Source: Histomonas meleagridis 2922-C6/04-290x (taxonomy: Eukaryota; Protista; Parabasalia). Taken from it: a stretch of 64,000 nucleotides of DNA. Where the stretch lies: NCBI GenBank assembly GCA_020184695.1, contig JAANOX010000063.1:1-64000 (forward strand), read 5' to 3'. Shown here piece after piece: positions 26,502 through 48,230 of this stretch. Position numbers and translations under genes: made by a program. A model generated the notes under the pieces. That model saw only the letters and a list, made by a program, of their open reading frames with translations, had not been told where the DNA came from and did no database searches. Every line of letters starts with the position of its first letter. Within the stretch, counting starts at the first letter, position 1.

Positions 26502-26532
26502 AAAATATATAAAGATTTATTTAAAAAAAAAT

Positions 26533-26793: not shown

Positions 26794-26804
26794 TTGGCGT
26801 TTTC

Positions 26805-27187: not shown

Positions 27188-28411
27188 TTATAAATTTTCC
27201 TGAAGAGTTGTAGTTTCTTTCTTTCGGGATTTAATAACGAAAATTGTTACTAAAACACCAATTAAAACAAGTAAAGCAGGGACAGTTACACCAACTACGA
27301 TTGCCGTGGTATTTGATTTGGATTTTGATTCTGCTGAACTAGATAGTATGTTTGATTGTGTATTTGAATTTGTTGTCGTAAATCTATTTGGTTTTGTAAA
27401 TGTATTGGATTGTGTAAATGTACTTGTTGGCCATGCACCGCAACCTTCAATTGTAGTTCCAATTGATAAATTAAAGTCACCAAATTTCGTCGAATTATAA
27501 GAACCGATAATCATTACAGTTTTTGCAGGACATCCATCAAATGCAGTTTCATTTACATTAGGTTCTTTGTTGCCATAAAAATAAATGCATGAAAGAGAAG
27601 AACAATTCCAAAATGCCCCAAATCCGATTGAAGATACCTTTTCTCCTAAAATAAGTCTTGATAAATTATAACAAAAAGCAAATGCTTCTTTGTCAATCAA
27701 AGTTACTGAATTTGGAATTTCAACGCTTTTAAGGGAACTACAATAAGCAAATGCATATTGGCCAATTTTAGATAACTTTTCTCCAAAAAGAATTTCTTTT
27801 AGTTTTATGCATTCATAAAATGCATGTGCTTGAATTGTGATTATTGAATTTGGTAATTTAATTTTTTCAAGTGAAGAACATTTATTAAAAGTAGATACAT
27901 TAATTGTAATTATACTTTCTCCTAAACTGACATTAACTAATTTGGTACATTCTGAAAATGCTTGTTTTTCTATTATAGAAACTGAATTTGATAATTTAAT
28001 TTTTTCAAGTGATGAACAATTAGCAAATGAATACATCTCAATTTTTTTGAGACTTTCTCCAAATGTAATTTCTTTTAATTTTATGCACCTTAAAAAAGCG
28101 CCGTAAGAAATTGTATTAATTTTTTCACCAAAAATAACATTTGATAAATTGAAACACTCGTAAAATGCTACGCGATTAATTATAGTTACTGAATTCCCGA
28201 TTTTAGCCGAAGTCAGATTCTCCCATCCTTTAAATGTTCCGTTTGGTATTGATGTAATTCCATCAGCAATTATTAAAATTGATGTTCTTTCTGCATATTG
28301 TCTTGCATTTTTAAAATCAGTTTCATTCTCTATTGTAAGTGTTTTTGTTGCATTATCGAATTTGATCTCTAAAGTTGGAACGATAAGAATAGAAAATAAA
28401 AGAGTAAACAT
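27188..28411 (-). CDS. BspA-like (TpLRR) type I surface protein, intact (copy A)
   Basis: Signal-like N-terminus, about 10 23-aa IxxxAFxxCxxLxxIxLP/FG repeats, Ser/Thr stalk, TM helix and short cytosolic tail. Confidence 0.92.
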   Translation of the reverse strand: MFTLLFSILIVPTLEIKFDNATKTLTIENETDFKNARQYAERTSILIIADGITSIPNGTFKGWENLTSAKIGNSVTIINRVAFYECFNLSNVIFGEKINTISYGAFLRCIKLKEITFGESLKKIEMYSFANCSSLEKIKLSNSVSIIEKQAFSECTKLVNVSLGESIITINVSTFNKCSSLEKIKLPNSIITIQAHAFYECIKLKEILFGEKLSKIGQYAFAYCSSLKSVEIPNSVTLIDKEAFAFCYNLSRLILGEKVSSIGFGAFWNCSSLSCIYFYGNKEPNVNETAFDGCPAKTVMIIGSYNSTKFGDFNLSIGTTIEGCGAWPTSTFTQSNTFTKPNRFTTTNSNTQSNILSSSAESKSKSNTTAIVVGVTVPALLVLIGVLVTIFVIKSRKKETTTLQENL

Positions 28412-28854
28412 TCGTATTGCTCTAATAAAAATGAAATGGAAATTTTAACACAAAAACCAGTTGATAAACAAAAAAAAACATAACAAATAAGTTATGAATG
28501 AGTTAATAAATGTTTGTTTGTCTGTCTTCGACTTATTTAATAAACGGAGGACACTATAGAGTATTTCCTGCTCTTGGTGATGTTCCTTCAGAAATTTTAT
28601 AATTTTTTTTCTAATATATACACTTAAAATATCAAAAAAATTTTTATTAAGTTTCTATTACATCGATGGAATATTAAAATGTATGTTCAGATCAAAATGT
28701 TTAAATTTTAAATCAAATTTATCTGATAACTTTTCTTGTAATCATTTTCTTTTTTTTCGAAACAATTTTCCAACAAACTTCAGATAAGGGTAAATCTAAT
28801 AATATAGTTTATATTACTCAAACGCATGAGAAATATTATTGAATACTTGTAATA

Positions 28855-29900
28855 TTATTGAATACTAGAATTCTTTTTTCTTCGGTACCTAATAACAAAA
28901 ATGACTACTAAAACAACAATCACAATTAATTGAGAAGAAACACCTAAACCAACTGCAATTGATGTGGTTTTTGCTGTCGATTTGGATGGTACTAAGTTAG
29001 ATATGATGTTTGATTGAGAAAATGCATTAGATGGTTTAATAGAACTTGTATGCGATTTAGAAATAGTGTTTATTTTTGTATATGTATTTGAGTGAGTATA
29101 TGTGTTTGATATAGTATATGTATGTGTGATAGAAAATGTATTTGAAATAAAAAATGTATTTGATTGTGTAAATGTATTTGTTGGCCATGGTTTGCAATCA
29201 TCAATTGTTGTCCCTTTCGATAAATTAAATTTATCAAATTTTGTTGAATTATATGAATCTAATGTCATTACATATTGAGCAGAACAATTATCAAATGTTG
29301 TTTTATCAATCTTAGGTTCTTTGTTACCATAATAATAAATACACATAAGGGAATGTCAATTACAAAATTCTTGATGTCCAATTGAATCTACATTAGAACC
29401 AATAATTAGCGCTGATAAATTAGTACAAAATCCAAATGCCAATCTATCAATTGAAGACTGAATTTGGAAGCCTAATATTTACAAGTGACATGCATCTAAA
29501 AAATGCATATGGATATATTTTAGTAAGTTTTTCTCCAAAAATAACTTCTGTCAAATAATAACATCTATAAAATGAATGGTTTTCAATCTGAGTAATCGTA
29601 TTTGATAATTTTATTCTTTTGCATGCATTCCATAAATGAACCTGAACTGATTTCAGTTAGCTTTTCTCCAAAAAGAACTGTGGCTAATTTATAACAATAA
29701 GAAAATGCATATTCTTCGATTATCAAAACTAAATCTGGGATTTTAAGAAATTTAAGTGATGAACAATTTGCAAATGAATGATGACCAATTGTAGTTATAT
29801 TATATCCCAAGATAACATCTAATAATTTATAACATCTTTCAAATGCACCATATGATATTGTGCTAACATTGTCACCGATGGTAACTTTAGATAAATTGGA
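28855..29900 (-). pseudogene. BspA-like gene G, N-terminally deleted and frameshifted
   Basis: TpLRR fragments at 29583-29945 and C-terminus 28855-29346 (YYGNKEP..CKPWPT stalk, TM). Confidence 0.8.
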
Positions 29901-30548
29901 ACAAAATAATAAAAAACTTAAAATTATAACACAAAAACCAGACACAAACTAAACCCAATATTTTACATAGATAATATATTTATTTGTCTTCACAATATAT
30001 GGTAATACAAAACCTTTATATTAAAAAAATTTATTAGGTAAAAGATTGTTAGTTATGTGTTCAATTCATGAATGCACATAAAAATAATAAAATTAATTTT
30101 ATTTTAATATTTCATGAGACCCTTCATGCATAAGATAAAAATTTTTTTTTAAAAAATAATAATAAATATGAATTAATAAGTAATCAAAATAAAATTGGGT
30201 AAGTCAATTAAAAAAATTTATAAAAATATAAAACTAATTTTTATTTTTTTAAAAATATTAATAGATAAAATTTTTTCTTAGGTGTTTCATAAGAACCTAT
30301 TTAGATATTTATAATAGAATGGTAAATAATTTATTTTAAATAATCAAAAGAAACGAATATTTTTTTTAATATTGAGAATGTTTTACTCAATTTTTATTAA
30401 AAACATTAACTATTTAAAGATAGGAATTATTTTCAAAAGAATATTATGATGATAATAGTAGGTAGGACATTAATTATTAGTAAAATTAGTCCATTTAAAT
30501 TTCATTACATCAAAATTCAAAAATATTTAAGCGTTAATTAGGTTTATT

Positions 30549-32055
30549 TTATGCTTTAAAATTACTTATATTTTGGAAGTTTTTGTATCTAATCACGAAA
30601 ATTGTGATTATGACAATGATTACAACTACCAAGCAAGCAGCACCTGCGCTAAGAGCAATTACTGCAGTTTTTGGAATTGACTTAGAGGAATTTGATTGAG
30701 AGAATGAATTAGTTGATGCAATAGAATTTTTGTCTGAGCTAGCAAGCCCATTTAAATTTAAAGCTGAAGGTAAATATGGTTGTGTAAATGTATTTGATGG
30801 CCATGGATTACATTCTTGAATTGTTGTCCCTTTCGATACATCAAAGTTACCAAATTTTGATGAATCATATGAATCTAATGTCATTACAGATTGAATAGGA
30901 CAATTATCAAATGCATTCTGGTCAATAATAGGTGCATTGTTACCATAGTAATAAACACATGTAAGAGAAGTACAATCACAAAATGCTTGCTGTCCGATTG
31001 AATCAACATTACAACCAAGAAGAAGCACTGATAATTTGGAACAATATCAGAATGCCATTGCTCCAATAGAAGTTACTGAATTTGGAATTTGGATTTTGAT
31101 AATAGAATCACAAAAAGCAAATGAACCTGAACCAAGTGAAGTAACTTCGTTTCCTAAAATAATGTTTGTAATTTGAGTACAATGAGAAAATGTATAATCT
31201 TTAATTGTTGTTAACGAGTTTGGCAATTGAATGCTTTGGATTGATGAACAATCTGAAAATGCATGATCGCCAATTGATGTTAAACTTTCTCCAAAGATAA
31301 CATCTGTTAATTTCTTACATTCAGAAAATGAATAAGATCCAATTTCAGAAAGTGAATTTGGGAATGGAAATCTTAAAAGTGATTCACAAGAAGAAAATGC
31401 ATGTTCCTTAATATTAACTAAGTTTTCTCCAACAGTAACATATGTTAATTTAGAACATTCAAAAAATGCATAGTCTTCAATCAAGGTTACTGAATTTGGT
31501 AATATGATATTTTCAAGTGATGAAGATTTTTCAAATGATTTTCTAGGGATTTTTTTTAAGATTTTCACCTAAGTTGATGTTTGTTAATTTTTTGCACTCA
31601 GAAAATGCTTTTTCTTCAATTGAAGAAACAGTTGCTGATAACTTAACAGTTTTAAGTGATGAACATTCAGCAAATGAATGATGACCAATTGTCGCAAGAT
31701 TATCACCAAAAATAGCTTCTGATAATTGATAACACCTATAAAATGCACCTCTCTCAATTGTGTTTACATTATTGCCAAAGGTAACATTGATTAAGTTGAA
31801 ACATTCTTTAAAAGCAGATTCTCCAATTGAAGTGACTGAATTTCCAATATTAACGCATGATATTTTCTCCCATCCTTCAAATGCTTTAGATGGTATTGAT
31901 GCAATTTCATCTTCAATTATTAAATGTAATGTTTCATCTTTAAATTCTGTTGAGGTTTGAAAATCTTCTTCAGTTTGTATTCTAAGATTTTTTGTACTAT
32001 TATCGAAAATTTCGAAAGTAGGAATAATAAGGTTACAAAGGAGTAGAGCAATCAT
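30549..32055 (-). pseudogene. BspA-like gene F, split into three frames
   Basis: ATG at 32055 (MIALLLCNLIIPTFEIFDNSTK); ORFs 31543-, 31047-31568 and 30549-31028 join through frameshifts near 31555 and 31040. Confidence 0.8.
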
Positions 32056-32348
32056 TCTGATTAGAATATTAATGAAATGGTAATGTGAAGACAAAAAACC
32101 AGACACAAAAATTAATGAATTGCACAATATTATAATCAATGAATAAATGTTTGTCTTCTTTCTATTAATAGCCACAAAAATCTTACGGTAGAAAAATTGA
32201 ATAACATAATGAATGCTCTAAAATTCATACTTTGATTAACTAAGGACAAACAAAAAATTTTTAATAAACAAAAATAAATTATTAAAATTGAAATCGATTC
32301 TCATAATTAATAACTTATTTAATTTGATCAATTCCATTTATTTTTATA

Positions 32349-32640
32349 TTGAAATTGTTTCAAAATATTGTACGTGAAGACACTCTGATCTTGACGATCT
32401 ATGACTATTTGTTTGTTGTCTATGGACCATTTACTGATATCAGTAATTTTGACGGGAAGTTTGCGTTTATTTACCACATTGAATACCCCAAATTAAGCTG
32501 CATGAAAGTGTGCATAACAAGTGTTAGCACTAGACTAACTGTTCTAATTTTTGTTGGTGATGAAGTGATCAATTAAATCTTTATCAACATTTTTAATACA
32601 AAATCCAAAAGCTTTGTGCTTGTTACAAACATCATTGATT
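32349..32640 (-). pseudogene. Degraded metacaspase paralogue
   Basis: Minus strand reads KDLIDHFITNKN..KRKLPVKI..VIDRQDQSVFTYNILK, versus DELIDHLINNKN..GRELPDKI..VIERQDQGVFTYNLTK in 40842-41591. Confidence 0.75.
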
Positions 32641-32816
32641 TTTTGATGTAGTTCATGATTTGAGATATCAGTAAAAACTTAAAATATACTAATATGTAAT
32701 TACCTTTATAAAAAATTTGTGAGAAAAAAAATTCTATTATATATTTTCTTAATGTTTTAATTTATTTTGTTATTCCGAAGCTTTGCAGACATGACAAAAG
32801 TGACACAAGGTCTGTT

Positions 32817-33191
32817 ATGAGAGAAGAATCAGCTTTTTTAATTTCATCCAACACCATATTATTTGGTGACCATCCACAGAAGAACATTTTCGAGCAAGAA
32901 ACAGAAGAAATCAATGCTTTTAACGAAGATGTTAATCAACATTGGAAACTCACATATCAACCACGCGTTATAGAAAACGAAGAAATCAAAACAGATGAAC
33001 CGAAAGTTTCTGCTCCAGCCAAACCACAGAAGCGACAAGAGCTCATCAGGAATTCGACTGGTTCCAAGATATTTCAACTTCTCCAAAACTTCAAACCGAA
33101 CACTGCGCATCGCCAGCCGCCGAAAATCGAGGAACCAAAGGCGAAAGACGATGTTAGGCCAAACAAGCGAAAACTTCAGTTTCAATTGTAA
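32817..33191 (+). CDS. Hypothetical hydrophilic protein (124 aa)
   Basis: ATG-initiated open frame with coding-like composition, convergent with RanBP1 (17-bp gap); no family recognised. Confidence 0.5.
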   Translation: MREESAFLISSNTILFGDHPQKNIFEQETEEINAFNEDVNQHWKLTYQPRVIENEEIKTDEPKVSAPAKPQKRQELIRNSTGSKIFQLLQNFKPNTAHRQPPKIEEPKAKDDVRPNKRKLQFQL

Positions 33192-33208
33192 ATGTTAAAT
33201 TGAATTAT

Positions 33209-33796
33209 TTACTCCTTTTTTTCTTCTGCCTTTTCCATTTTGTCAATTTGTTCCTTATTGATCTTTTGAGCTTCTTCGAATTGTTTCTTAAATTCTTGAG
33301 TGATCTCGGCTGTCTTGAAACGGACAGAAAGAACATCATGCGATTCAGTACCATCGGCAAAATCAGTAGCAGTCCAAATTAAAGCGCGTTCACTGCCTGC
33401 ATGTGGCTTAAGTTCCATCTGTGGAAGAATGTAATGGTTTGCGCATACACGGAATGTTTGATTGCGTCTCATTAAAATACGGCATCTTCCGGTTTCCTTG
33501 CTCTTAAGAATCTTGATGAATCCAACACCACGTTCCTTCCATTCTTTGCTTGTTGCATCAAAGCGGTAGAGAATTGCCTTATCTCCAAAAAGCTTATCTT
33601 CGCCAGCATCTGGATCTTCTTGTTCAACAGCTGTTGATGGAGCTTCCTTATGGCTATCATCAACTGCATTTGCATCATCTTGAGCAGAAGTTGCTGCTGG
33701 TGTTGCTGCAACAGTTACTGTTAAGTTTAATGTTACATTAGGTGTTGCTTTTGTTTTTGCGGCTGTATCTGGAGTTGCTGGATCTTTGTCTGACAT
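33209..33796 (-). CDS. RANBP1: Ran-binding protein 1 (RanBD)
   Basis: AILYRFD..EWKERGVGFIKILK..RILMRRNQTFRVCANH..RALIW..DFADG; likely ATG at 33796. Confidence 0.9.
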   Translation of the reverse strand: MSDKDPATPDTAAKTKATPNVTLNLTVTVAATPAATSAQDDANAVDDSHKEAPSTAVEQEDPDAGEDKLFGDKAILYRFDATSKEWKERGVGFIKILKSKETGRCRILMRRNQTFRVCANHYILPQMELKPHAGSERALIWTATDFADGTESHDVLSVRFKTAEITQEFKKQFEEAQKINKEQIDKMEKAEEKKE

Positions 33797-34559
33797 TAAA
33801 TATAAATGACCATGAATAACCGTCACCCAAACGATCAAATTTATTTGAATAATTGACCAGATTGCCGATACAATATCAAAAAAGAGCTGGTTTGATGCGA
33901 GCAAAGATTGTGAATTCACATTTGCGAAATCCCATCAAAAAATTGGAAAATTTATGAATTTTTGAATATTCATATCATGAAATTTAATTGTTTTTTTTTG
34001 CTTTTTACAAACATTATTCCAGGAAAATGTATGATCCATTTATATTTTCAAATAAATCTCGCAACATATTTGGAATATTATAACCATAAAAACTCAATAC
34101 AATAAGAGAAAATTTATTCTAATACTTTAAGCTAAGGGTTTTCTTGTGACTTTGTCTATAAAAAACTTTTGGCTAGAAAAAATTCCTCCTCTTGCCATGT
34201 AAAAAATGCCATTTCCAAGGTGAAGTGAGTTTGTTGCACAAATTTTGTGGCAAAATCTAATGCATTCAATTGAAAGTTGGCCAACTTAACGATACAGAGT
34301 TACAACATCATCACATAGGATCAAAAAATATTATTTTGCAATGTATTTCTAAATAAATCAGATTAATGTGAAGAATAAACTTAATATGTTTTGCACTAAT
34401 GTTTAATTTAGGATATATATTTTATCTTTATCATTAATATTCCAAATATACTTGAGTTTAGGATTTCCAATTTCTAAAACAAAAATTAATAAATTTTGAG
34501 TAATTTCATTATTTTTTAGAAAAAACACTTGACTAGAAATAAGTTACCAATTTTTGCTG

Positions 34560-34860
34560 ATTCATCAATAATCATTACAAATTTCCATTCCTTCTTCAAT
34601 CAAATCTAAAATGATTATTATTAATCCTTATATAAAATGTATTTCTTTCATAATTCCCCTATTATTACAATATTATCTTTATAAAGATATCAAAAGATAT
34701 CATTTTAATGAAACAGAATTGCTGCTTTATAAGCATTTTCAAATAATGAATGAGCTTGCTCACATTAATGAATGATTTCCACTTGCACTTGCATATTTAC
34801 CTGGATATTGTAGAAGTGCGCCAATAAGCAATACTCAAATTTGAGTTGTTCATTTAATTG
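34560..34860 (-). pseudogene. Relic of an ankyrin/DUF3447-family N-terminal region; boundaries approximate
   Basis: Broken minus-strand PGKYASASGN..EQAHSLFENAYKAAILFH matches TGKYAVAGGN..EQNHSSFENAYETAIVFH of the 8545 gene. Confidence 0.55.
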
Positions 34861-35946: not shown

Positions 35947-36996
35947 TTACTGAAAAATATCTTCAGATTTTTCATATGAACAATTTAAATTTTCCGCAGT
36001 GAAATCTTCTTCTTTCATTGAAAGCAAAGAAGAATCAAAATTATCACACAAGAACACACAAAAACTCAAACCACCAACAGCTTTTCTAACATTTTGCAGA
36101 TTTGTTTCTGTTAGAATATATCGATTTTTTTTAGTTCCATCTCCAATTTTTCCGTATGAATTATCACCAAAACCATAAACAAATCCATTAGAATTAACAA
36201 ATATACAAAACGTCGGCATAGCAAAGACATTAATTATATCATTAGCAATTGGCGTTGTTTTTATATTACGTTGATGAGAACAAATATTCCCATATGCCCA
36301 ACAATCATTGTTTTCATCTAAAGTTATAATATAATCTAAAGATGAAACAACTTTAATGACATTAATCACACGTTGTGATCGAATATTTACCAATGGAATC
36401 ATTGAAGATGTTGAATCAACTTTAAATGCAATGTTATTACATAAAACAACAGCAAATCCTTCTCCACATGAAATATCTGTTGCAGGAGAAGGAAGTGGTA
36501 TTGTAATTGGATCTTTGCAGTCAATAAAATTTGGCCACAAAAAAATGTTTTTGTTATTAGCAAATGATAGCGTATTACCAAATGCAGAAATTGCTGTTAC
36601 ATGTTCAAATGGAAATAGTGTTGGCTGGTCACCAAATGATTTACCGGAAATATATATGTTATTTGATTTGTCAGTCCAAACTGTAAATATTTCACCACAA
36701 CTAACGCTTGTGAAAAACATGTCTGTTTTTACTCGATAAAATTCTTTTGCAAACTCAATTGAACCAATACCAAGATCTCCATGTTTATTGCTCCCTAGTG
36801 AATATGCAGAACCATTTTCTAAAACAATATGAATTGAATGATTTGATGAAGAAATTATTTTTATTTGATTATTTATATTTAAATTTAATTCTAATCCATT
36901 GGTTTGTGCTTCTTCATTTGAAATTCCTTGTAATTCACCAAAAAGAATCATTTTTTGATTCAAATTCATTATAAATTTGGAGCAGACATGTGACAT
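35947..36996 (-). CDS. RCC1/BLIP-II repeat protein (complete copy)
   Basis: YSLGSNKHGDLGIG, VSCGEIFTV, ISCGEGF and VYGFGDNSYGKIGDG; start at ATG 36996 or 36969. Confidence 0.8.
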   Translation of the reverse strand: MSHVCSKFIMNLNQKMILFGELQGISNEEAQTNGLELNLNINNQIKIISSSNHSIHIVLENGSAYSLGSNKHGDLGIGSIEFAKEFYRVKTDMFFTSVSCGEIFTVWTDKSNNIYISGKSFGDQPTLFPFEHVTAISAFGNTLSFANNKNIFLWPNFIDCKDPITIPLPSPATDISCGEGFAVVLCNNIAFKVDSTSSMIPLVNIRSQRVINVIKVVSSLDYIITLDENNDCWAYGNICSHQRNIKTTPIANDIINVFAMPTFCIFVNSNGFVYGFGDNSYGKIGDGTKKNRYILTETNLQNVRKAVGGLSFCVFLCDNFDSSLLSMKEEDFTAENLNCSYEKSEDIFQ

Positions 36997-37007
36997 GAAA
37001 ACGCCAA

Positions 37008-37265
37008 ATGGAGAAAATTCTTCTTTGTTGGCCACTTGATGAATATATTCATAAAAAGATAGTTATTGAAATGCAAGGAGGACGAGAAATTCGAGGTATT
37101 CTTAATGGTTATGATCAATTTGGGAATCTTGTTATAGGAGAATGTTTTGAAACGATTCCTTTAACTAAAACAGAAAATTTCAAACCTCGAAAACTTGGGA
37201 CTGCAGTTGTTCGATTCCCTCATATTCTTGCAATTGATCAAGTTGAAGAAGAAGAAGAAAAATAA
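37008..37265 (+). CDS. LSm/Sm-fold protein (LSm7/SmG-like; subunit uncertain)
   Basis: PLDEYIHKKIVIEMQGGREIRGILNGYDQFGNLVI (Sm1) and RKLGTAVVR (Sm2). Confidence 0.8.
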   Translation: MEKILLCWPLDEYIHKKIVIEMQGGREIRGILNGYDQFGNLVIGECFETIPLTKTENFKPRKLGTAVVRFPHILAIDQVEEEEEK

Positions 37266-38728
37266 ATTTTTTTAAATAAATCTTTATATATTTTTTATTT
37301 TACAATATTAAAATGGAAATGGTTGCGAAACCATTTAACAGAAATTTTCACATCACATTTCATATTAATTTTGAAGGATCATCATTTTCTAAAAATTCCA
37401 TGTTTATTTTTCAATTATTCCAGTATCATCTAAACTCTTTCATTGCCATATAAAATTCTAAAAATATAGCAAGCACGTTGCAAAAAAATCGAAACACATT
37501 TTTTAAAAAGTGGCTACAAAAAAGTCTATCGGAGCGGTTATTATCGTACTCATAAAAAGTTTGTTTTCATATAAAACTTTTTTTGCATTCTTCTCTTAAA
37601 GCAAAATAAAATTAATGTTTCGTTTGATTTTTGAAAGTCATTTATGCCACCACATGAGCATAAATATTATTTCTATTTTTTTGAAATTTGTGATGATATT
37701 CTTGTTTAAAAAGTGGTACCACTTTTTAATTTCTGAAGGAATTGTGATATGAAAAATGATCGTTGCAAGGGCTTTGAAAATGAGGTAGTCATCTTGACAA
37801 GCTATATGAAAAACTGACACCATAAACAAAAAATTCAAATATCTCTACATATGATCCATAAAATTCTGAATAAATATAAATATAATAATATATATCGCGA
37901 ATTAATATTAAATATTATGTATCATATAAATATATTATTTTATTAATAAAATTGATCTTTTTTATTCCTTTATTGTATTAATATTTTTTCACGTTAATAA
38001 TGAAGGAAATAACGTAAATAATTAATTTTCAATCACAAAAATGAAATTAATTTTCGAGGCATTGCTAAAAATAGAGAAATTCAAAAAAATATTACAAAAA
38101 TTATTTGGTATATTATGATGTGTATATATGATTATTTGTGTATATCACGAGATTGGCCGTTAAATTTTTCTTGAAACTCAAAAATAATATATAACATATT
38201 GCCACATGGCACAATTGCCCCCAATTGAAAGAGTTTAGTATCACCATGTACTTTTGCATTTGTAAAAGACACTGTCAACCAACTTTTCCTCTTATAAATT
38301 TCTTTTTAATTTTAAAGTTATATGTAATGTATTTGATACATTTCAGATTTTAACATATAATGACAGTAGACGTATTTTTTATGAAGATATAATAATTTTT
38401 AAAAAATTTCCTTTAAATTTGTGTACGTTACAATACAAAAACGGTCATCTAGCATATATTTTTTTAATATTTTTTTTATGCAGATGTTTTATAAAGACAA
38501 AAATCAATTTAAATATGATATTATTTTAATTCAATAAGTATTCATCATGAAAATACAAAAAATTTTATAAAGTTAAACATATGCATATATGCAAATATAA
38601 TTTATATGTTTAAAATAATTTTTTCAATTTAGAGAAAAAGTGGAATTAATTTTGTTTAAACAACTCTTCTTTATTTATAAAGAACTTTGAGTTTTGTTTG
38701 ATTTTTAAGAGCTACATTACTGTAAAAC

Positions 38729-39929
38729 TTATAAATTTTCCTGAAGAGTTGTAGTTTCTTTCTTTCGGGATTTAATAACGTAAATGGTTACTAAAACACC
38801 AATTAAAACTAGTAAAGCAGGGACAATTATGCCAACTATGATTGTTGTGTTATTTGAATTGGATTTTGATTTTGATGAGTCAGATGGCATGTTTGCTGGC
38901 GTAAAGATATTTTGTTTTGTAAATGTATTGGATTGTGTAAATGTACTTGTTGGCCATGCACCACAACCTTCAATTGTAGTTCCAATTGATACATTAAGTT
39001 TACCAAATTTCGTCGAATTATAAGAACCGATAATCATTACAATTTTTGCAGGACATCCTTCAAATGCAGTTTCATTTACATTAGGCTCTTTGTTGCCATA
39101 AAAATAAATGCATGAAAGAGAAGAACAATTCCAAAATGCCCCAGATCCGATTGAAGATACCTTTTCTCCCAAAAAAAGTGTTGATAAATTATGACAAAAA
39201 GCAAATGATACATTATCAATCAAAGTTACTGAATTTGGAATTTCAACGCTTTTAAGGGAATTACAAGAAGCAAATGCATATTGGCCAATTTTAGATAACT
39301 TTTCTCCAAAAAGAATTTCTTTTAGTTTTATGCATTCATAAAATGCATGTGCTTGAATTGTGATTATTGAATTTGGTAATTTTTTCAAGTGAAGAACATT
39401 TATTAAAAGTAGATACATTAATTGTAATTATACTTTCTCCTAAACTAACATTAACTAATTTGGTACATTCTGAAAATGCTTGTTTTTCTATTATAGAAAC
39501 TGAATTTGATAATTTAATTTTTTCAAGTGATGAACATCGAGCAAATGCCTTTATCTCAATTTTTTTGAGACTTTCTCCAAATGTAATTTCTTTTAATTTT
39601 ATGCACTTGTAAAATGCACTATCAGAAATTGTACTAATTTTTTCACCAAAAGTAACATTTGATAAATTGGAACACTCGTAAAATGCTACGCGATTAATTA
39701 TAGTTACTGAATTCCCGATTGTAACCGAAGTCAGATTCGCCCACCTGTTAAATGGTTCGCTTGGTATTGATGTAATTCCATCAGCAATTATTAAAATTAA
39801 TGTTTTTTCTTTATAAGATAATGCATCTTCAAAATCAGTTTCATTCTCTATTGTAAGTGTTTTTGTTGCATTATCGAATTTGATCTCTAAAGTTGGAACG
39901 ATAAGAATAGAAAATAAAAGAGTAAACAT
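38729..39929 (-). pseudogene. BspA-like copy B, 5-bp deletion frameshift near 39380
   Basis: Direct paralogue of 27188-28411; GAAAAAATT[AAATT]ACCA deletion splits it into ORFs 39336-39929 and 38729-39418. Confidence 0.88.
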
Positions 39930-40645
39930 TCGTATTGCTCTAATAAAAATGAAGTGGAAATTTTAACACAAAAACCAGTTGATAAACAAAAACAAAAAAA
40001 CATAACAAATAAGTTATGAATGAGTTAATAAATGTTTGTTTGTCTGTCTTCGACTTATTTAATAAACGGAGGACACTATAGAGTATTTCCTGCTCTTGGT
40101 GATGTTCCTTCAGAAATTTTATAATCTAATATATACACTTAAAAATATCATTTTTTTATTAAGTTTCTATTACATCGATGAAATATAAAAATGTATGTTC
40201 AGATCAAAATGTTTAAATTTTAAATCAAATTTATCTGATAACTTTTCTTGTAATCATTTTCTTTTTTTTCGAAACAATTTTCCAACAAACTTCAGATAAG
40301 GGTAAATCTAATAATATAGTTTATATTACTCAAACGCATGATTTATCTAGAAATATTGGAAATTGTGTTGTAAGTAATTATTATTTCACATTTTATATAT
40401 CTATGAAAATGGCGATGAATGAAGTAAATATTTAAATTTCGTTAATATTCTTTAAAATGAATTGCATTTTTATAATTATTTTGCTTATATAATCTTTTCA
40501 TGTTTTCATATGTGTGTTATGAAAAAAAGAAATACCAATTTCCTATTTATTCTCACTAAAAGGATATAAATTAGAAAGTTATATTAGTATCATTTGAATA
40601 AATATTGTTTTGAAATTTTTTTGGAAAATAATTATTGAATAAACC

Positions 40646-40685: not shown

Positions 40686-40841
40686 ACTAAAATAATTAAT
40701 GATTTTTAAGAAATTATATCAAAATTGAAATCGATTTCAATATTAATTCCATTTATATAAAAAATCATTTTTAAAATCATTAAATCATAAAGCATATTCA
40801 TTAAATATAATAATAATAAAATTTATTTAGTTATTATTTAG

Positions 40842-41591
40842 TTATTCGAATAATGGCATATCAAGGAGCTCATTAGATGTGGTAGCTACTGTGAATGTCT
40901 GTGCATACTTACGAAGACTCTTAGTCATTGCTGTCTTGAGCTCTTTCGGTGTGATTGTTGGGTTGCTTTTGATGGTCTTTGTCAAGTTATATGTGAAGAC
41001 GCCCTGATCCTGACGTTCGATAACTGTTTGTTTTGCTGTTTGTCGATCGTTTGCTGCTGAAATTGAGATGATTTTGTCGGGAAGTTCTCGCCCATTTACA
41101 TCACCTCCTTGAATATCCCAGATTGAACCAGAATGACATGCATCTGTAATAAGCGTTATACGATTATTTGGATTTTTGTTGTTAATTAAGTGATCAATTA
41201 ACTCATCATCAACAATATTTCCATCATCAAAGACAAAAGCTTCATCATTCCCATCATCTTCATCTCCATCAAGATCTCTAACCGTTGTGCCATGCCCAAC
41301 ATAGAAGAAAACTAAGTGATCTGTTGTGAATTGAAAGAAATGATCAAGATATTTTAAAAAATTTCTTGAATGAGGATTGTGCAAGAAGTAAATATGAAAC
41401 CCAAAGTTCTTCACGCATTTAGCCAATGAAACGGCATCATTTAATGGCCCAGTACCAAGATTAAGGCGGTATGATTGGTATGTATTAACACAAATAAAAC
41501 ATGCTTTATCAAACTCAGTCGGTAGACGTGAAATAGGAATGCTACCAAGATCTCGACCATATGTTCGAAGACGTGTGACTGGATCAGACAT
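40842..41591 (-). CDS. Metacaspase-like cysteine peptidase (clan CD, C14)
   Basis: His-Cys dyad in FFYVGHG and ITDACHSG; DGDEDDGNDEAFVFDD; ISAANDRQTAKQ; ATG at 41591. Confidence 0.9.
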   Translation of the reverse strand: MSDPVTRLRTYGRDLGSIPISRLPTEFDKACFICVNTYQSYRLNLGTGPLNDAVSLAKCVKNFGFHIYFLHNPHSRNFLKYLDHFFQFTTDHLVFFYVGHGTTVRDLDGDEDDGNDEAFVFDDGNIVDDELIDHLINNKNPNNRITLITDACHSGSIWDIQGGDVNGRELPDKIISISAANDRQTAKQTVIERQDQGVFTYNLTKTIKSNPTITPKELKTAMTKSLRKYAQTFTVATTSNELLDMPLFE

Positions 41592-41818
41592 TTTCCTCGA
41601 ATATAATATGTCTAACGTATTATACCTCAATTAACTGCTTTTTAAACGTTCAAAAAGGGTTTTGGATTTTCGGAAAAGTGCAGTATTTTTGAATACAGAA
41701 AAAGTTCTTGCTTGGGAGAAACGATAGAAGCGGTTATGGAATACGTTTAAATAAAAGGTTTTTTTGAATAACTCTGCCAGTGAAGATGATTAAAGCCTAA
41801 AAAAAAAAAAAAACATTT

Positions 41819-43600
41819 TTAGAAACTAGAAAAAAAAATTGCTTCTTCTTCTATGGCTTTTTTCGTTTTTGTAATAAGATCTGATCGAATTTTTTGAAGC
41901 CTCGAAAATGCTCGTTCTGCTGCGGCTTCAGTGGATTGTATCAATAAGATCTGCTGTCTGATTCTTGCGAATGGTCTCCAATCTTCAATTGTATACAATA
42001 CACTAAAATATCCATAAGACGAAGTCTTACTGCTTGGATAAAATGGAAGCTGATTGTCACTCAATGTGAACCAATCAATAAACTTGCATGAAACTTTTTC
42101 GATATCTCAATCTGAATAATTATGCATGTGACAAATCTTCGTCATTCGCTCCAACAAACTTTGTAATGAAACATCTGCTTCAACGTTTGAATTTTCGAGG
42201 TTTCCATCTAGTACAGCAAAATAATCAAATTCTTCCCTATCGGCCTCTTCTTCCTCTTGTACTTAAATAGGTTCAATTTCACCTCCGGTTATCATTTCAT
42301 CATATACTAAATTCTCGTCAATTTCAATTTGATTATAATCTTCTTCTAATTGCTCATTAAATTGTTTTATGCTATTAAGTAGCATCTTGTCGTTTTGTTC
42401 AAGTTTAAGTTTTTGATTTAAATTACTCGTATCCACATCCCTTTGGGCAACTTCGACTTCTTTTGCATATTCTCTTCCTTGTAAAGTGAGAGAGAATGAA
42501 AGTTTAATTAATTGATAATCTCCTGTCGTTTGCAATCTTCTGATAATTTTATTATAATGAATATGATCATAATCGAATGTCGTATCATTATAATTATTGA
42601 TTTCATAATACGAATCAGGCAAACAGAGAATAAGTGGATAAATGTTTGACGCAGGGAAATGATCTCCTTCAATTGTTTTTATTAGTTTAATGAGAGGTAA
42701 TAATAAAAGATTTGTATTTGAAATTACATCTATGAGCATGAACTTGATGAAGCTTAAATCATCATCACTATTGAACAGATTTGTATCATTTAATATTTGT
42801 TTGATTTTACCAATCTTACGAATTCACCATTCACAAATCTCAAATGTATTAAACCATCTTGTTAGACAAAATCCGGGACATACTTCTCGCATTGTTGAAC
42901 TGATTGGTTTGGATCGAAAAATTTTCGAAAATCTCGAAATATAATCTTGAATCATTGACAAATTGTCCGATTGAAATGTGTCTTTGATACCTAATGCTAT
43001 TGTATGTGCAATACATGGGAAAAAAATAATTGGATAATTGTTCTCATGCATTGATGTGAAATGAAATGAATTTAGTGATTCTGGATCAATGGCTGATTTT
43101 TGTACTGGTAGGTTGTCCGCAGTGATCGATCCAATCGCAACGTTGTATGATTTTAATTGATCAATAATATTAATAACAACGCATTTATAGTTCTGTAAGT
43201 TCCCAATAAAATTCTTATTTGCTGAAATTATTAGTGGTTTTAAATCTAATGCTATAGGGTTTGAAATTATTGCTATTAAATAAGAAACGCCATGATTCAT
43301 CCCAGCATCAATCACTAAAGAATTATAAGGAAACAAATAATACTTCTGAAGTGTGGCCTTTTTTAGTTGGTTTTCGCATATTGGCAGAAGTTTTTTATCA
43401 GTGTGTTTCTTGAGTTGAATGAAAATAATGAATCGATTTCTGCGTTTGGATTACTTTGGCCCAGCTGAATACACATCTTAATCATACATTTGAGGACTTG
43501 ATGCAGCATTGATTGAAAGATCTAGACTTGCGATTAAAGAGTGAAATTGAACATCTATATTTTTGGAAATTTTCGTTATGCCAAAATAATTTTCAAGAAG
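41819..43600 (-). mobile_element. hAT-superfamily transposase relic, fragmented; ends not defined
   Basis: Ordered motifs LVIDAG, SITADN, FFPCIAHTIALGIKD, CLTRWFNT and QSTEAAAERAFS. Confidence 0.75.
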
Positions 43601-43965
43601 TGTAATTGTGGTTGATTGTGTATATATATTTGATTTTGTTATTGTTGTTGTATTTGAATTTGTTAATGTACTTGATTTTGTATATGAGTTTGTTGGAAAT
43701 AGAGTACAATTACTTATATTTGATCCAACAGAAACGTTAAGTTTACCAAATTTTGACGAATTATATATATGTTTAATGTCATCACACATCCTACAAAACA
43801 ACAATCGAATGCTGTGTTATCAATATTAGGTTCTGTGTTACCGCAATAATAAACACATATAAGAGAAGTGCAATTACAAAATGTTTAAATCCAATTGAAG
43901 CTAAATTTTCACAAAGAATAAGTACTGATAAATTAGAACAAAGTCCAAATGCCATTGTTCCAATT
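43600..43965 (-). pseudogene. BspA-like internal fragment E (last LRR, cap, partial stalk)
   Basis: IGTMAFGLCSNLSVLIL, SSKFGKLNVSVG and CTLFPTNSYTKS; stalk runs into hAT sequence. Confidence 0.7.
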
Positions 43966-44127
43966 GTGTTTCGATTTTTTTGCATACGTGCTTGCTATAT
44001 TTTTAGAATTTAATATGGTAACAAAAGAGTTTTCATTGAAATTATAGTAATTGGATTTTTTTTTTTTTTTTTTTTTTTTTGCAATCTTATAATTCCATCT
44101 TTTGGATTTTACTATAACACTACAAAA

Positions 44128-44180
44128 ATGATGAGTTAATTGATCACTTAATTAACAACAAAAATCCAAATAATCGTATA
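44128..44180 (+). other. 53-bp captured fragment of the metacaspase CDS
   Basis: Exact reverse complement of 41157-41209 (DDELIDHLINNKNPNNR). Confidence 0.95.
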
Positions 44181-44776
44181 TATATATATATATTAGTGAT
44201 GGTTTATTCAATAATTACTTTCCACAAAATTTCAAAACAATATTTATTCAAATGATACTAATATAACTTTCTAATTTATATCCTTTTAGTGAGAATAAAT
44301 AGGAAATTGGTATTTCTTTTTTTCATAACACACATATGAAAACATGAAAAGATTATATAAGCAAAATAATTATAAAAATGCAATTCATTTTAAAGAATAT
44401 TAACGAAATTTAAATATTTACTTCATTCATCGCCATTTTCATAGATATATAAAATGTGAAATAATAATTACTTACAACACAATTTCCAATATTTCTAGAA
44501 CATTTTAATATTCCATCGATGTAATAGAAACTTAATAAAAATTTTTTTTTGATATTTTAAGTGTATATATTAGAAAAAAAATTATAAAATTTCTGAAGGA
44601 ACATCACCAAGAGCAGGAAATACTCTATAGTGTCCTCCGTTTATTAAATAAGTCGAAGACAGACAAACAAACATTTATTAACTCATTCATAACTTATTTG
44701 TTATGTTTTTTTGTTTTTGTTTATCAACTGGTTTTTGTGTTAAAATTTCCATTTCATTTTTATTAGAGCAATACGA

Positions 44777-46069
44777 ATGTTTACTCTTTTATTTTCTATT
44801 CTTATCGTTCCAACTTTAGAGATCAAATTCGATAATGCAACAAAAAAACACTTACAATAGAGAATGAAACTGATTTTAAAAATGCAAGACAATATGCAGA
44901 AAGAACATCAATTTTAATAATTGCTGATGGAATTACATCAATACCAAACGGAACATTTAAAGGATGGGAGAATCTAACTTCGGCTAAAATCGGGAATTCA
45001 GTAACTATAATTAATCGCGTAGCATTTTACGAGTGTTTCAATTTATCAAATGTTATTTTTGGTAAAAAAATTAATACAATTTCTTACGGCGCTTTTTTAA
45101 GGTGCATAAAATTAAAAGAAATTACATTTGGAGAAAGTCTCAAAAAAATTGAGATGAGGGCATTTGCTAATTGTTCATCACTTGAAAAAATTAAATTATC
45201 AAATTCAGTTTCTATAATAGAAAAACAAGCATTTTCAGAATGTACCAAATTAGTTAGTGTCAGTTTAGGAGAAAGTATAATTACAATTAATGTATCTACT
45301 TTTAATAAATGTTCTTCACTTGAAAAATTAAATTACCAAATTCAATAATCACAATTCAAGCACATGCATTTTTATGAATGCATAAAACTAAAAAGAAATT
45401 CTTTTTGGAGAAAAGTTATCTAAAATTGGCCAATATGCATTTGCTTATTGTAGTTCCCTTAAAAGCGTTGAAATTCCAAATTCAGTAACTTTGATTGACA
45501 AAGAAGCATTTGCTTTTTGTTATAATTTATCAAGACTTATTTTAGGAGAAAAGGTATCTTCAATCGGATTTGGGGCATTTTGGAATTGTTCTTCTCTTTC
45601 ATGCATTTATTTTTATGGCAACAAAGAACCTAATGTAAATGAAACTGCATTTGATGGATGTCCTGCAAAAACTGTAATGATTATCGGTTCTTATAATTCG
45701 ACGAAATTTGGTGACTTTAATTTATCAATTGGAACTACAATTGAAGGTTGCGGTGCATGGCCAACAAGTACATTTACACAATCCAATACATTTACAAAAC
45801 CAAATAGATTTACGACAACAAATTCAAATATACAATCAAACATACAGACAAGTTCATCTGCAACTCCAGTTACATCATCTACTCCAATCACATATACACA
45901 ATCAAACATACTATCTAGTTCAGCAGAATCAAAATCCAAATCAAATACCACGGCAATCGTAGTTGGTGTAACTGTCCCTGCTTTACTTGTTTTAATTGGT
46001 GTTTTAGTAACAATTTTCGTTATTAAACCCCGAAAGAAAAAAACTACAACTCTTCAGGAAAATTTATAA
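44777..46069 (+). pseudogene. BspA-like copy C with three homopolymer frameshifts
   Basis: Near-identical to copy A; +2 near 44845, -1 near 45328, +1 near 45392. Confidence 0.88.
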
Positions 46070-46255
46070 GTTTTACAGTAATATAGCTCTTAAAAATTAA
46101 AGAAAATCCAAAGTTCTTTAAAACATAACTAAAGGTTAAATTTAACAAAATCAACTTCTTATGTGTTTGACAAATAACATTTTTTAGTTATTCAATAAAG
46201 ATAATAATCAGAATATATATCTTGTAAAAGATTTGTAATCTTAAGTTCCCTTTCC

Positions 46256-46452
46256 GAATATACAGAACCATTTTCTAAAACAATATGAATTGAATGATTT
46301 GATGAAGAAATTATTTTTATTTGATTATTTATATTTAAATTTAATTCTAATCCATTGGTTTGTGCTTCTTCATTTAAAATCCCTTGTAATTCACCAAAAA
46401 GAATCATTTTTTGATTCAAATTCATTATAAATTTGGAGCAGACATGTGACAT
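46256..46452 (-). pseudogene. RCC1-like 5' fragment (copy C)
   Basis: Same junction as 26805-27001. Confidence 0.9.
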
Positions 46453-46463
46453 GAAAACGCCAA

Positions 46464-46718
46464 ATGGAGAAAATTCTTCTTTGTTGGCCACTTGATGAAT
46501 ATATTCATAAAAAGATAGTTATTGAAATGCAAGGAGGACGAGAAATTCGAGGTATTCTTAATGGTTATGATCAATTTGGGAATCTTGTTATAGGAGAATG
46601 TTTTGAAACGATTCCTTTAACTAAAACAGAAAATTTCAAACCTCGAAAACTTGGGACTGCAGTTGTTCGATTCCCTCATATTCTTGCAATTGATCAAGTT
46701 GAAGAAGAAGAAAAATAA
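46464..46718 (+). CDS. LSm/Sm-fold protein, duplicate (84 aa)
   Basis: Identical protein to 37008-37265 except one fewer Glu. Confidence 0.8.
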   Translation: MEKILLCWPLDEYIHKKIVIEMQGGREIRGILNGYDQFGNLVIGECFETIPLTKTENFKPRKLGTAVVRFPHILAIDQVEEEEK

Positions 46719-46749
46719 ATTTTTTTTTAAATAAATCTTTATATATTTT

Positions 46750-47241
46750 TTATTTTACAATATTAAAATGGAAATGTTCATTAATTGCTGAAACAAATTC
46801 TGTGCCATCAAATTCTATCTTTTGTGCTTGAATTTTTCCAACTTTTCGAAAAGTTTCGAGAAAATTTTCAACATTCGATATTTGTAATAATCCTTTTTGA
46901 TGACATTCTGTCGCTAATTCAAGCTGATGATTTTCCATCAATTCTTCATTCATTACAACTAAAAGTGCTTTATCAAGTTGAAGAACTTCTAAGATCGTAC
47001 CTGCTCCTGCATGTCCAATAATAAAATCTGATGTTTCTAAATATTTATGAAATTCTTCTGGACTTGCATATGAAAAATATTGGTCAAGATATTTAACTTC
47101 TTTTTCGTAACAACCGACTTGTGCAATAATTTTATCATAACCTAAAGACTTACTAATTTCAAGAAATTCTTTACTATCAATTTTTGAGATTAAAGCATCA
47201 AAATGTGTTGAACCAACGCAAACAAAAATTGTTTTCCCCAT
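46750..47241 (-). CDS. ALG13: ALG13 (copy 2)
   Basis: Identical protein to copy 1 except QIANVE to QISNVE. Confidence 0.88.
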   Translation of the reverse strand: MGKTIFVCVGSTHFDALISKIDSKEFLEISKSLGYDKIIAQVGCYEKEVKYLDQYFSYASPEEFHKYLETSDFIIGHAGAGTILEVLQLDKALLVVMNEELMENHQLELATECHQKGLLQISNVENFLETFRKVGKIQAQKIEFDGTEFVSAINEHFHFNIVK

Positions 47242-47594
47242 TTATGTAGAATTGTGAGGTGAAATAATACTAACGGTCATCATTGTATATCCCAATATTT
47301 TTATTTTTTTATGTTTATTAGACAAGTCTATTAAATTTATTAATTTCAAACAACTTCATATATATATTATGGAAATATTATACATCACATAGCTATTCAG
47401 AAATTTAGAGCTTTTCATTTTGGCTTTAACTTTTTAGATCAAAATAAATATTTTTATTTATTTTTTATAATAAATATATTTAATAATTAAAAAATTATTA
47501 GTATGTTCATTATCAACGAATAAAATAACTCACATCAATAATATTAAAGTTTATATGAATATAAGTAAGAGATTAATATGCTTTTATAAAGTAC

Positions 47595-48230
47595 ATTTAC
47601 GACAACAAATTCAAATACACAATCAAACATGCAGACAAGTTCATCTGCAACTCCAGTTACATCATCTACTCCAATCACATATACACAATCAAACATACTA
47701 TCTAGCTCAGCAGAATCAAAATCCAAATCAAATACCGCGGCAATCGTAGTTGGTGTAACTGTCCCTGCTTTACTTGTTTTAATTGGTGTTTTAGTAACAA
47801 TTTTCGTTATTAAATCCCGAAAGAAAAAAACTACAACTCTTCAGGAAAATTTATAAGTTTTACAGTAATATAGCTCTTAAAAATTAAAGAAAATTCAAAG
47901 TTCTTTAAAACATAACTAAAGGTTAAATTTAACAAAATCAACTTCTTATGTGTTTGACAAATAACATTTTTTAGTTATTCAATAAAGATAATAATCAGAA
48001 TATATATCTTGTAAAAGATTTGTAATCTTAAGTTCCCTTTCCGAATATACAGAACCATTTTCTAAAACAATATGAATTGAATGATTTGATGAAGAAATTA
48101 TTTTTATTTGATCATTTATATTTAAATTTAATTCCAATCCATTGGTTTGTGCTTCTTCATTTGAAATCCCTTGTAATTCACCAAAAAGAATAATTTTTTG
48201 ATTAAAAATTCATTAAAATGGAGAAAATTC
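47595..48230 (+). repeat. Copy D: BspA stalk/TM/3' flank plus RCC1 5' fragment (direct repeat of 45808-46476)
   Basis: Homology starts at ATTTACGACAAC and ends at GGAGAAAATTC; several substitutions and one internal deletion. Confidence 0.9.

What the first reader, a model, noticed from the sequence alone, without database searches (positions are those of the whole stretch)
27188..48230. One intact BspA gene among six broken or partial relatives: possible antigenic-variation archive
Seen: seven BspA-type loci (A 27188-28411 intact; G, F, B and C frameshifted or deleted; E and D fragments). A and B share a near-identical ~430-bp 5' flank and a near-identical central block of about 90 codons. 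Their differences cluster at the xxAFxxC positions of the LRRs: YGAFLRC/DSAFYKC, MYSFANC/IKAFARC, KEAFAFCY/NVSFAFCH, NGTFKGWE/SEPFNRWA, KNARQYAERTS/EDALSYKEKTL. By eye the changes are overwhelmingly amino-acid altering. Known: these positions form the variable binding face of TpLRR proteins, and an expressed-gene plus pseudogene-donor layout underlies variation by gene conversion in Borrelia vls, Anaplasma msp2 and trypanosome VSG. Inference: diversifying selection and/or segmental conversion is generating a variable surface repertoire.
Basis: partly seen in the sequence, partly recalled or inferred. Interest (0 to 1): 0.75.

Follow-up and report, generated by a model that had tools for sequence, protein, structure and literature searches.

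The report
Duplicated BspA surface-gene cluster, not archive
A poultry parasite's cluster of one intact and six damaged surface-adhesin (BspA) genes comes from recent duplication, sequence exchange between copies and selection for change at five positions per repeat, and nothing shows that it works as a pseudogene store for switching surface coats.

Summary
The window is from the published ONT/Illumina assembly of the attenuated Histomonas meleagridis strain; contig count and total length match exactly.

**Observation: confirmed.** There are seven BspA-type (LRR_5) loci. A is intact. B has one 5-nt deletion. C has four homopolymer-length differences. F and G are old pseudogenes, and E and D are fragments.

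**What the tests show**
- A and B are mosaics. Two tracts are 0-0.4% diverged, inside sequence that is 6-13% diverged (24% in the 3' flank). The runs test gives p<5e-5, which supports gene conversion.
- Whole-gene A-B dN/dS is 1.18 (not significant).
- 23 of 30 A-B residue changes in the LRRs fall in 6 of 23 repeat columns.
- dN at the x positions of xxAFxxCx is 4 times the LRR-wide dS for A-B.
- The same excess is 2-12 times in eight independent paralogue pairs elsewhere in the genome (combined p 3e-20).

**What is not supported: the expressed-gene-plus-pseudogene-archive model.**
- B and C keep the promoter flank and the start codon.
- A-specific patches have no donor anywhere in the genome.
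- Housekeeping genes sit between the copies, and some were duplicated with them.
- Dozens of intact BspA genes lie elsewhere.
- C's frame breaks, and possibly B's, look like unpolished nanopore errors.

Other first readers raised similar ideas on other pieces of this genome; those notes are unchecked.

The parts
27188..28411 (-). BspA-like gene A. It is intact at 407 aa: signal peptide, 10-11 TpLRR repeats of 23 residues, a Ser/Thr-rich stalk, a TM helix and a short basic tail.
   Evidence: The ORF is. Pfam LRR_5 matches at E=4e-56. The F..C motif repeats every 23 residues from F60 to F267/F291. The AF2 model has pLDDT 84 with a helix at 377-406. Foldseek hits 4fs7, 4gt6, 4cp6 and 6mlx.
28412..28829 (-). 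5' flank of A. It is shared with B (39930-40341), and its proximal ~270 nt are shared with C (44500-44776).
   Evidence: Alignments. A and B differ at 9 of 378 aligned positions plus 3 indels.
27746..28018 (-). Codons 132-222 of A, a gene-conversion tract shared with B (about 39269-39536) and with C.
   Evidence: A and B differ at 1 of 269 positions here, against 12.9% in codons 34-131. A-H divergence stays at 9.9%. The fragment test gives p=0.0002-0.0016.
28030..28033 (-). Four contiguous substitutions specific to A, in LRR columns 15-16 of repeat 4. They arose after the A/C duplication.
   Evidence: There are 11 A-C substitutions in 2.79 kb, and 4 of them are here. C, B and H resemble one another at this spot. 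No donor exists in the genome.
28858..29948 (-). Locus G, an old 5'-truncated BspA pseudogene about 45% aa identical to A.
   Evidence: tblastn finds pieces in three frames. The frame map shows an in-frame stop.
30552..32217 (-). Locus F, an old BspA pseudogene 43-53% aa identical to A, with one frameshift and one in-frame stop.
38732..39929 (-). Locus B, a full-length paralogue 85% aa identical to A. It reads in two frames because of one 5-nt deletion near 39382/39383, inside the tract that is identical to A and C.
43601..43994 (-). Locus E, a fragment of about 130 codons in three frames. It is related to G and F (74-75% nt identity).
44777..46066 (+). Locus C, an inverted near-identical copy of A. 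It differs at four homopolymer run lengths (44842, 45323, 45369, 45390), by a 66-nt in-frame length difference in the stalk (45828-45893) and by five point substitutions.
47590..47853 (+). Locus D, the C-terminal 88 codons plus 3' flank, copied from C (97.6% nt identity).
25969..28682 (.). Left arm of a 2.8-kb inverted segmental duplication. It carries an Alg13-like gene, an LSM copy, gene A and part of A's 5' flank.
   Evidence: Self-blastn gives 96.2% identity over 2790 columns.
44500..47282 (.). Right arm of the inverted duplication. It carries C, an LSM copy and the Alg13-like copy.

Best explanation
This is a young, locally duplicated cluster of BspA-like (TpLRR) type-I membrane protein genes in Histomonas meleagridis. 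It evolves by birth-and-death with gene conversion, as LRR receptor and adhesin families generally do, and is not a programmed switching system.

**Shown.**
- Two lineages are present. F, G and E are old remnants, truncated or carrying stops. A, B, C and D are young, with a fourth full copy (H) on another contig.
- The young copies were made by a 1.7-kb direct and a 2.8-kb inverted segmental duplication. The same duplications also copied neighbouring Alg13-like and LSM genes.
- A and B exchanged sequence by ectopic gene conversion. The first tract covers the 5' flank to codon 33. The second covers codons 132-222.
- Amino-acid differences concentrate at the x positions of xxAFxxCx. At those positions dN exceeds dS several-fold across the whole family, while the scaffold positions are under purifying selection.

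**Inferred.**
- These five positions per repeat form an exposed stripe on the variable-segment side of the solenoid. That stripe contacts host or bacterial ligands, or antibodies, and duplication plus positive selection diversifies the repertoire over evolutionary time.
- C's four frame breaks are probably residual nanopore errors (about 60% likely). B's single break may be too (about 40% likely). Short-read polishing is blind where copies are identical. If so, A, B and C would be three functional recent paralogues.
For: **Organism and assembly method.** G000 has 43,133,364 bp in 281 contigs. This equals Table 1 of PMC8529796 for the attenuated strain, assembled with ONT Flye and three rounds of racon with Illumina reads.

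**Duplication map.**

**Mosaic structure.**

**Subfamily member H.**

**Selection.**
- The A-B differences are enriched in particular LRR columns.
- Eight independent pairs all show dN at the variable columns above dS: combined p 3e-20, pooled omega 4.4 against 0.64.

**Indel census.**

| Pair | Substitutions | Indels | Indels in homopolymers |
|---|---|---|---|
| A-C | 9-11 | 7-10 | 5-7 |
| A-B | 107 | 6 | 0 |
| A-H | 177 | 11 | 0 |

- At all four C frame breaks, A agrees with every copy that aligns there: B at all four sites and H at three, with H unalignable at 44842.
- B's deletion lies inside the tract that is identical to A and C.

**Context.**
- The neighbouring genes are housekeeping genes.
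- Most BspA paralogues elsewhere have no internal stops.
Against: - No read-level or RNA data could be reached, so the breaks in B and C may be real.
- B's lesion is 5 nt, which is not a typical homopolymer error.
- For A-B alone, omega at the variable columns measured against their own dS is only 1.6 (p=0.3). The multi-nucleotide patches could also come from complex mutations or from unsampled donors.
- The set of variable columns was chosen from A-B and the family consensus, and one column was dropped before the eight-pair test.
- A static genome cannot exclude somatic switching.
Confidence: 0.72

Rival explanations
1. Antigenic-variation archive. A is the expression copy. B-G are silent donors that feed segments into A by unidirectional gene conversion and so change the surface coat during infection.
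For: - One intact gene sits among six defective relatives within 21 kb.
- Mosaic tracts exist between A and B.
- The variable positions are under diversifying selection.
- A has one very recent 4-nt patch at variable columns.
- Noel et al. 2010 floated a pseudogene reservoir for T. vaginalis BspA genes.
Against: - B and C carry the same 5' flank, ATG and signal peptide as A, so they are not promoterless cassettes.
- A-specific patches have no donor in the cluster or in the genome.
- The tracts that A and B share are the conserved parts, not the variable ones.
- Housekeeping genes are interspersed and were co-duplicated.
- Many intact BspA genes lie on other contigs.
- C's lesions look like assembly errors.
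Confidence: 0.06
2. Plain decay. All the lesions are real. B, C, D, E, F and G are dead duplicates drifting neutrally. The conversion tracts are incidental, and the cluster adds nothing to the functional repertoire beyond A.
For: - Whole-gene A-B dN/dS is 1.18 and A-C is 8 nonsynonymous to 1 synonymous, as expected for neutral change.
- F and G carry in-frame stops and truncations that polishing errors do not explain.
- H on another contig carries 9 stops.
Against: - The A-B differences are not placed at random. 23 of 30 fall in the variable columns, and the scaffold columns show omega of about 0.5-0.66. Most of the divergence therefore arose while both copies were under selection.
- The homopolymer-only pattern in C is absent from the far more diverged A-B and A-H comparisons.
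Confidence: 0.18
3. Slipped-strand phase variation. Homopolymer tracts in C, and the AAATT repeat hit in both B and C, act as reversible on/off switches like bacterial contingency loci.
For: - All four frame breaks in C are run-length changes.
- B and C are both hit at the same short repeat.
Against: - Four separate tracts would have to revert together.
- The runs are only 4-7 nt long.
- The same runs are length-stable in the older A-B-H comparisons.
- The assembly is nanopore-based, and homopolymers are its main error mode.
Confidence: 0.04

Closest known systems
TvBspA family of Trichomonas vaginalis (Noel et al. 2010, PMC2843621)
   Same: - Both are parabasalid TpLRR surface proteins with a TM domain and a short cytoplasmic tail.
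- Both are large families with many pseudogenes and stalk-length variation.
- The authors suggested positive selection and a pseudogene reservoir for recombination.
   Different: - The family here is much smaller: 94 annotated genes against 911.
- Here dN/dS by repeat column and mosaic tracts were actually measured. That paper proposed these tests but did not run them.
Plant NBS-LRR resistance-gene clusters (birth-and-death evolution with diversifying selection on exposed LRR residues; from my own knowledge, see Leister 2004 cited in PMC2843621)
   Same: Both show tandem and segmental duplicates, pseudogenes and fragments, gene-conversion mosaics, and omega above 1 at x positions within a conserved LRR scaffold.
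   Different: - This is a different LRR class and a different organism.
- The selected positions here lie in the variable segment around AFxxC, not in the concave xxLxLxx strand.
Gene-conversion antigenic variation: Borrelia vlsE/vls cassettes, Anaplasma msp2, trypanosome VSG, Neisseria pilE/pilS
   Same: Both have one intact gene near defective relatives. Both have conserved framework segments flanking variable ones, which could guide recombination.
   Different: - The putative donors here keep the promoter and the start codon.
- No donor-to-recipient relation is visible.
- The array is not dedicated or contiguous.
- Many other intact family members exist.
- No clonal switching data are available.
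Entamoeba BspA-like genes under diversifying selection (Wilson et al. 2019, PMC6414313)
   Same: A BspA family in a gut protist is flagged as evolving under diversifying selection.
   Different: That study reports whole-gene pN/pS between strains. Here the signal is resolved to five positions per repeat between paralogues.

Membership tests
BspA-like / TpLRR proteins (Pfam LRR_5, PF13306) | Significant match to the LRR_5 profile | tested here: met
   E=4.1e-56 and 188.8 bits against a cut-off of 27.7.
BspA-like / TpLRR proteins (Pfam LRR_5, PF13306) | 23-residue repeat with the consensus LxxIxIxxxVxxIxxxAFxxCxx | tested here: met
   The F..C motif falls at positions 60, 83, 106 ... 267, exactly 23 apart, with an 11th at 291 (24 apart).
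BspA-like / TpLRR proteins (Pfam LRR_5, PF13306) | Fold like the solved BspA-type LRR structures | tested here: met
   The AF2 model has pLDDT 84. Foldseek gives 4fs7 at E=1e-12 and also 4gt6, 4h09, PcpA (4cp6) and TpLRR (6mlx).
Gene-conversion antigenic variation (vls / msp2 / VSG / pilS type) | Donors are promoterless, truncated cassettes, and one expression site holds the promoter | tested here: not met
   B and C share A's 5' flank, ATG and signal peptide. Only D, E and G are truncated.
Gene-conversion antigenic variation (vls / msp2 / VSG / pilS type) | Variable segments of the expressed copy are traceable to donor copies | tested here: not met
   A-specific patches occur only in A, or in A and C. 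There is no donor in the window, in 20 close paralogues or in whole-genome pattern searches.
Gene-conversion antigenic variation (vls / msp2 / VSG / pilS type) | A dedicated, contiguous donor array | tested here: not met
   RanBP1, RCC1-like, LSM, metacaspase and Alg13-like genes lie between the copies.
Gene-conversion antigenic variation (vls / msp2 / VSG / pilS type) | High-frequency segmental change of the expressed gene within a clonal lineage | not testable with these tools
Birth-and-death LRR gene cluster with diversifying selection | Recent tandem or segmental duplicates together with pseudogenes and fragments | tested here: met
Birth-and-death LRR gene cluster with diversifying selection | Mosaic tracts (gene conversion) between paralogues | tested here: met
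   Runs test p<5e-5. Fragment tests p=0.0002-0.014.
Birth-and-death LRR gene cluster with diversifying selection | dN above dS at the variable repeat positions and dN below dS at the scaffold positions | tested here: met
   In eight independent pairs, pooled omega is 4.4 against 0.64, combined p 3e-20. For A-B the ratio to LRR-wide dS is 4.1, p=4e-4. Measured against the variable columns' own dS it is only 1.6, not significant.
Phase-variable contingency locus | Reversible length change of a repeat tract within a population switches the reading frame | not testable with these tools
   Only one assembly is available. The tracts are length-stable across A, B and H.

The most novel reading that the evidence does not exclude
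Histomonas BspA clusters are a working variation system. Copies kept one lesion from expression, or silent but intact, would exchange segments with an expressed gene through the conserved LRR scaffold. This would give clonal surface variation at a ligand- or antibody-facing stripe that lies on the non-concave side of the TpLRR solenoid.
Probability: 0.06. Interest if true: 0.8.

Novelty: new member of a known kind. Interest (0 to 1): 0.4.

Why it matters
BspA-like proteins are the main candidate adhesins of Histomonas, a poultry pathogen with no licensed treatment. The analysis shows which five positions per repeat are under strong diversifying selection. It also shows that these positions lie outside the canonical concave LRR face. 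That points to the likely interaction surface and to the parts of these proteins that would make poor vaccine targets. It also gives a practical warning: apparent 'pseudogenes' among near-identical copies in this nanopore-based assembly may be polishing artefacts. Counts of broken BspA genes, and models built on them, need read-level checks.

Tried and rejected
- **Donor search for the divergent patches.** I ran BLAST of the variable regions of A and B against the whole genome. I ran a k-mer search with up to one mismatch in the window and 20 paralogues. I also ran whole-genome pattern searches for two A-specific patches. The only near matches were in eight non-BspA loci. No donor was found, so micro-conversion from an existing paralogue is not supported.\n- **Independent check of the frame breaks.** The look-up of encoding contigs had no record of protein A. 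I recomputed the same test from the stored alignment.\n- **Structure.** Model coordinates are not exposed, so solvent exposure of the variable columns was judged only from the DSSP string.\n- **Not available.** codeml site models, GARD and 3SEQ could not be run.
Full report
**Origin of the window.** The window encodes eukaryotic housekeeping proteins: COG4, Raptor, ribosomal protein S6e, RanBP1, an LSM protein, a GH14 beta-amylase and DUF3447 ankyrin proteins. Its genome has 43,133,364 bp in 281 contigs at about 28% GC. These figures equal Table 1 of Palmieri et al. 2021 for the attenuated Histomonas meleagridis strain. That assembly was built from ONT reads with Flye and polished by three rounds of racon with Illumina reads (PMC8529796). 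The method matters for every frameshift discussed below.

tblastn with protein A finds seven loci; frame maps are.
- A (27188-28411, minus strand) is an intact 407-aa type-I membrane protein. It has a signal peptide and ten 23-residue TpLRR repeats in exact register, plus an eleventh one residue out of step. It then has a disordered Ser/Thr stalk, a TM helix and a short basic tail. It matches Pfam LRR_5 at E=4e-56. Its AF2 model matches solved BspA-type LRR structures, including 4fs7 and TpLRR 6mlx.
- F and G lie head-to-tail upstream of A. They are 43-53% identical to A and carry frameshifts, in-frame stops and, in G, a 5' truncation.
- E is a fragment in three frames, related to F and G.
- B is 85% identical to A and reads in two frames because of a single 5-nt deletion.
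- C is an inverted copy about 99% identical to A. It has four homopolymer run-length differences and a 66-nt in-frame difference in the stalk.
- D is the last 88 codons, copied from C.

**How the cluster was built.** Self-comparison shows a 2.8-kb inverted duplication (25969-28682 against 47282-44500, 96%). That duplication also carries an Alg13-like gene and an LSM gene. There is also a 1.7-kb direct duplication (27103-28829 against 38646-40341, 92%) and several smaller copies. Housekeeping genes lie between the BspA copies. A fourth full member of the A/B/C subfamily, here called H, lies on contig 207. It is a pseudogene.

**Mosaic structure.** A-B divergence by segment is shown below. A-H divergence stays at 7-14% throughout.

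| Segment | A-B divergence |
|---|---|
| 5' flank | 2.4% |
| codons 1-33 | 0 of 99 positions |
| codons 34-131 | 12.9% |
| codons 132-222 | 0.4% |
| codons 223-320 | 6.1% |
| codons 321-407 | 9.7% |
| 3' flank | 23.5% |

- Along the A/B/H alignment, the sites where one sequence is the odd one out form 93 runs, against 144+-6.5 after shuffling (p<5e-5).
- GENECONV-like longest-fragment tests are significant for A=B (p=0.0002-0.0016), A=H (p=0.002) and B=H (p=0.014).
- Ectopic gene conversion between A and B is therefore well supported.
- B's variable region has no better match anywhere in the genome than A or C at 88%. The simplest history is an older A/B split that was later homogenised in two tracts, not an import of foreign segments.

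**Selection.**
- Over the whole gene, A and B differ by 64.3 nonsynonymous and 15.7 synonymous changes. dN/dS is 1.18 (p=0.68), which is the neutral proportion in this AT-rich gene.
- The changes are not placed at random. In the LRR register, 23 of 30 residue differences fall in columns 14-16, 18, 19 and 21. These are the x positions around AF..C (p=1e-8).
- In the unconverted repeats, dN at these columns is 0.32 against an LRR-wide dS of 0.076. The ratio is 4.1 (p=4e-4). Against the synonymous changes of those same codons the ratio is only 1.6 (not significant). This is because several of those codons are replaced at two or three bases at once.
- To test the idea independently, I fetched paralogues from other contigs and took eight phylogenetically disjoint pairs.
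- In every pair, dN at columns 14, 15, 18, 19 and 21 exceeds the LRR-wide dS. The ratio is 2.2 to 11.8 in six pairs, and in the other two no synonymous change was seen at all. The excess is individually significant in six of the eight pairs (p=0.10 and 0.14 in the other two).
- Combined p is 3e-20. Pooled omega is 4.4 at those columns and 0.64 at the others (earlier versions).
- Diversifying selection on these positions is therefore a property of the family.
- In the model, strands occupy columns 2-5 and 11-12. The selected columns lie in the coil after the second strand. This is the 'variable segment', not the concave sheet that most LRR proteins use.

**Are B and C really broken?** The indel census is.

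| Pair | Substitutions | Indels | Indels in homopolymer runs |
|---|---|---|---|
| A-C | 9-11 | 7-10 | 5-7 |
| A-B | 107 | 6 | 0 |
| A-H | 177 | 11 | 0 |

- At all four frame breaks in C, A agrees with every copy that aligns there: B at all four and H at three, with H unalignable at 44842.
- B's one lesion lies inside the 273-nt tract that is identical in A, B and C.
- These are the places where short reads cannot be assigned to a copy, so racon cannot correct nanopore indels there.
- I rate C's breaks as probably artefacts (about 60%) and B's as possibly so (about 40%).
- F, G, E and D are genuine remnants.

**Against the archive model.**
- B and C keep A's upstream flank, start codon and signal peptide, so they are whole-gene duplicates.
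- The patches derived in A or in A and C have no donor in the window, in 20 close paralogues or in whole-genome searches. These patches are codons 126-128, 240-243 and 312-315.
- What A and B share by conversion is the conserved part of the gene.
- Most BspA paralogues on other contigs show no internal stops, and 94 are annotated. A is therefore not a unique expression site.
- Noel et al. 2010 already suggested that BspA pseudogenes might serve as a recombination reservoir in T. vaginalis. They proposed dN/dS tests but did not run them.
- Whole-gene diversifying selection on BspA genes is reported for Entamoeba.

**Verdict.** This is an ordinary but clearly documented case of duplication, gene conversion and positive selection in an LRR surface-protein family. 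Programmed switching is not excluded by a static sequence, but nothing here supports it. Other first readers left similar unchecked notes on other pieces of this genome.

Noticed in passing
window 26010-26501 and 46750-47241; 26533-26790, 37008-37265, 46464-46718: Housekeeping genes were copied along with the BspA genes. An Alg13-like GT28 C-terminal-domain gene is present twice at about 100% identity. An LSM gene is present three times, with ORF lengths of 64, 85 and 84 aa. The length differences coincide with homopolymer indels in the flank.
   Followed up: partly
window 36800-37321: A 98.7% copy of A's 3' flank ends inside the 5' end of the RCC1-like gene (35947-37035). A duplication boundary therefore lies within that gene.
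   Followed up: no
window 27860-27867 (A coordinates); B near 39382; C 45323: B and C are both shortened at the same short A-run/AAATT repeat, by 5 nt and 1 nt. An identical sequence context about 140 nt upstream is intact in all copies. This could be a slippage hotspot or a context-specific nanopore error.
   Followed up: partly
window 28030-28033: The intact gene A carries four contiguous base changes, altering two residues at variable LRR columns. They arose after the A/C duplication and are A's only changes in 2.8 kb. No donor exists in the genome.
   Followed up: yes
L003-L019 (paralogues on other contigs) versus window 27188-27300: The family uses two kinds of membrane anchor. A, B, C, D and L007 have a TM helix plus a short basic cytoplasmic tail. 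Most other close paralogues end in a hydrophobic C-terminus with no tail.
   Followed up: no
window 29158-29469 versus 30774-31087: The old pseudogenes G and F share a tract that is 81% identical inside sequence that is about 68% identical. This suggests past conversion in that lineage too.
   Followed up: no
window 6335-7470, 9381-9850, 20261-20560: A repeat family with about 170-nt spacing lies next to DUF3447-ankyrin genes. The ankyrin gene at 7322-8545 also has a 78-85% identical copy near 22348-22894.
   Followed up: no
window 45828-45893: C carries a 66-nt stalk segment that A and B lack. H has part of it, and it is bounded by a short direct repeat. Stalk length therefore varies between copies, as described for the T. 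vaginalis protein TvBspA625.
   Followed up: partly
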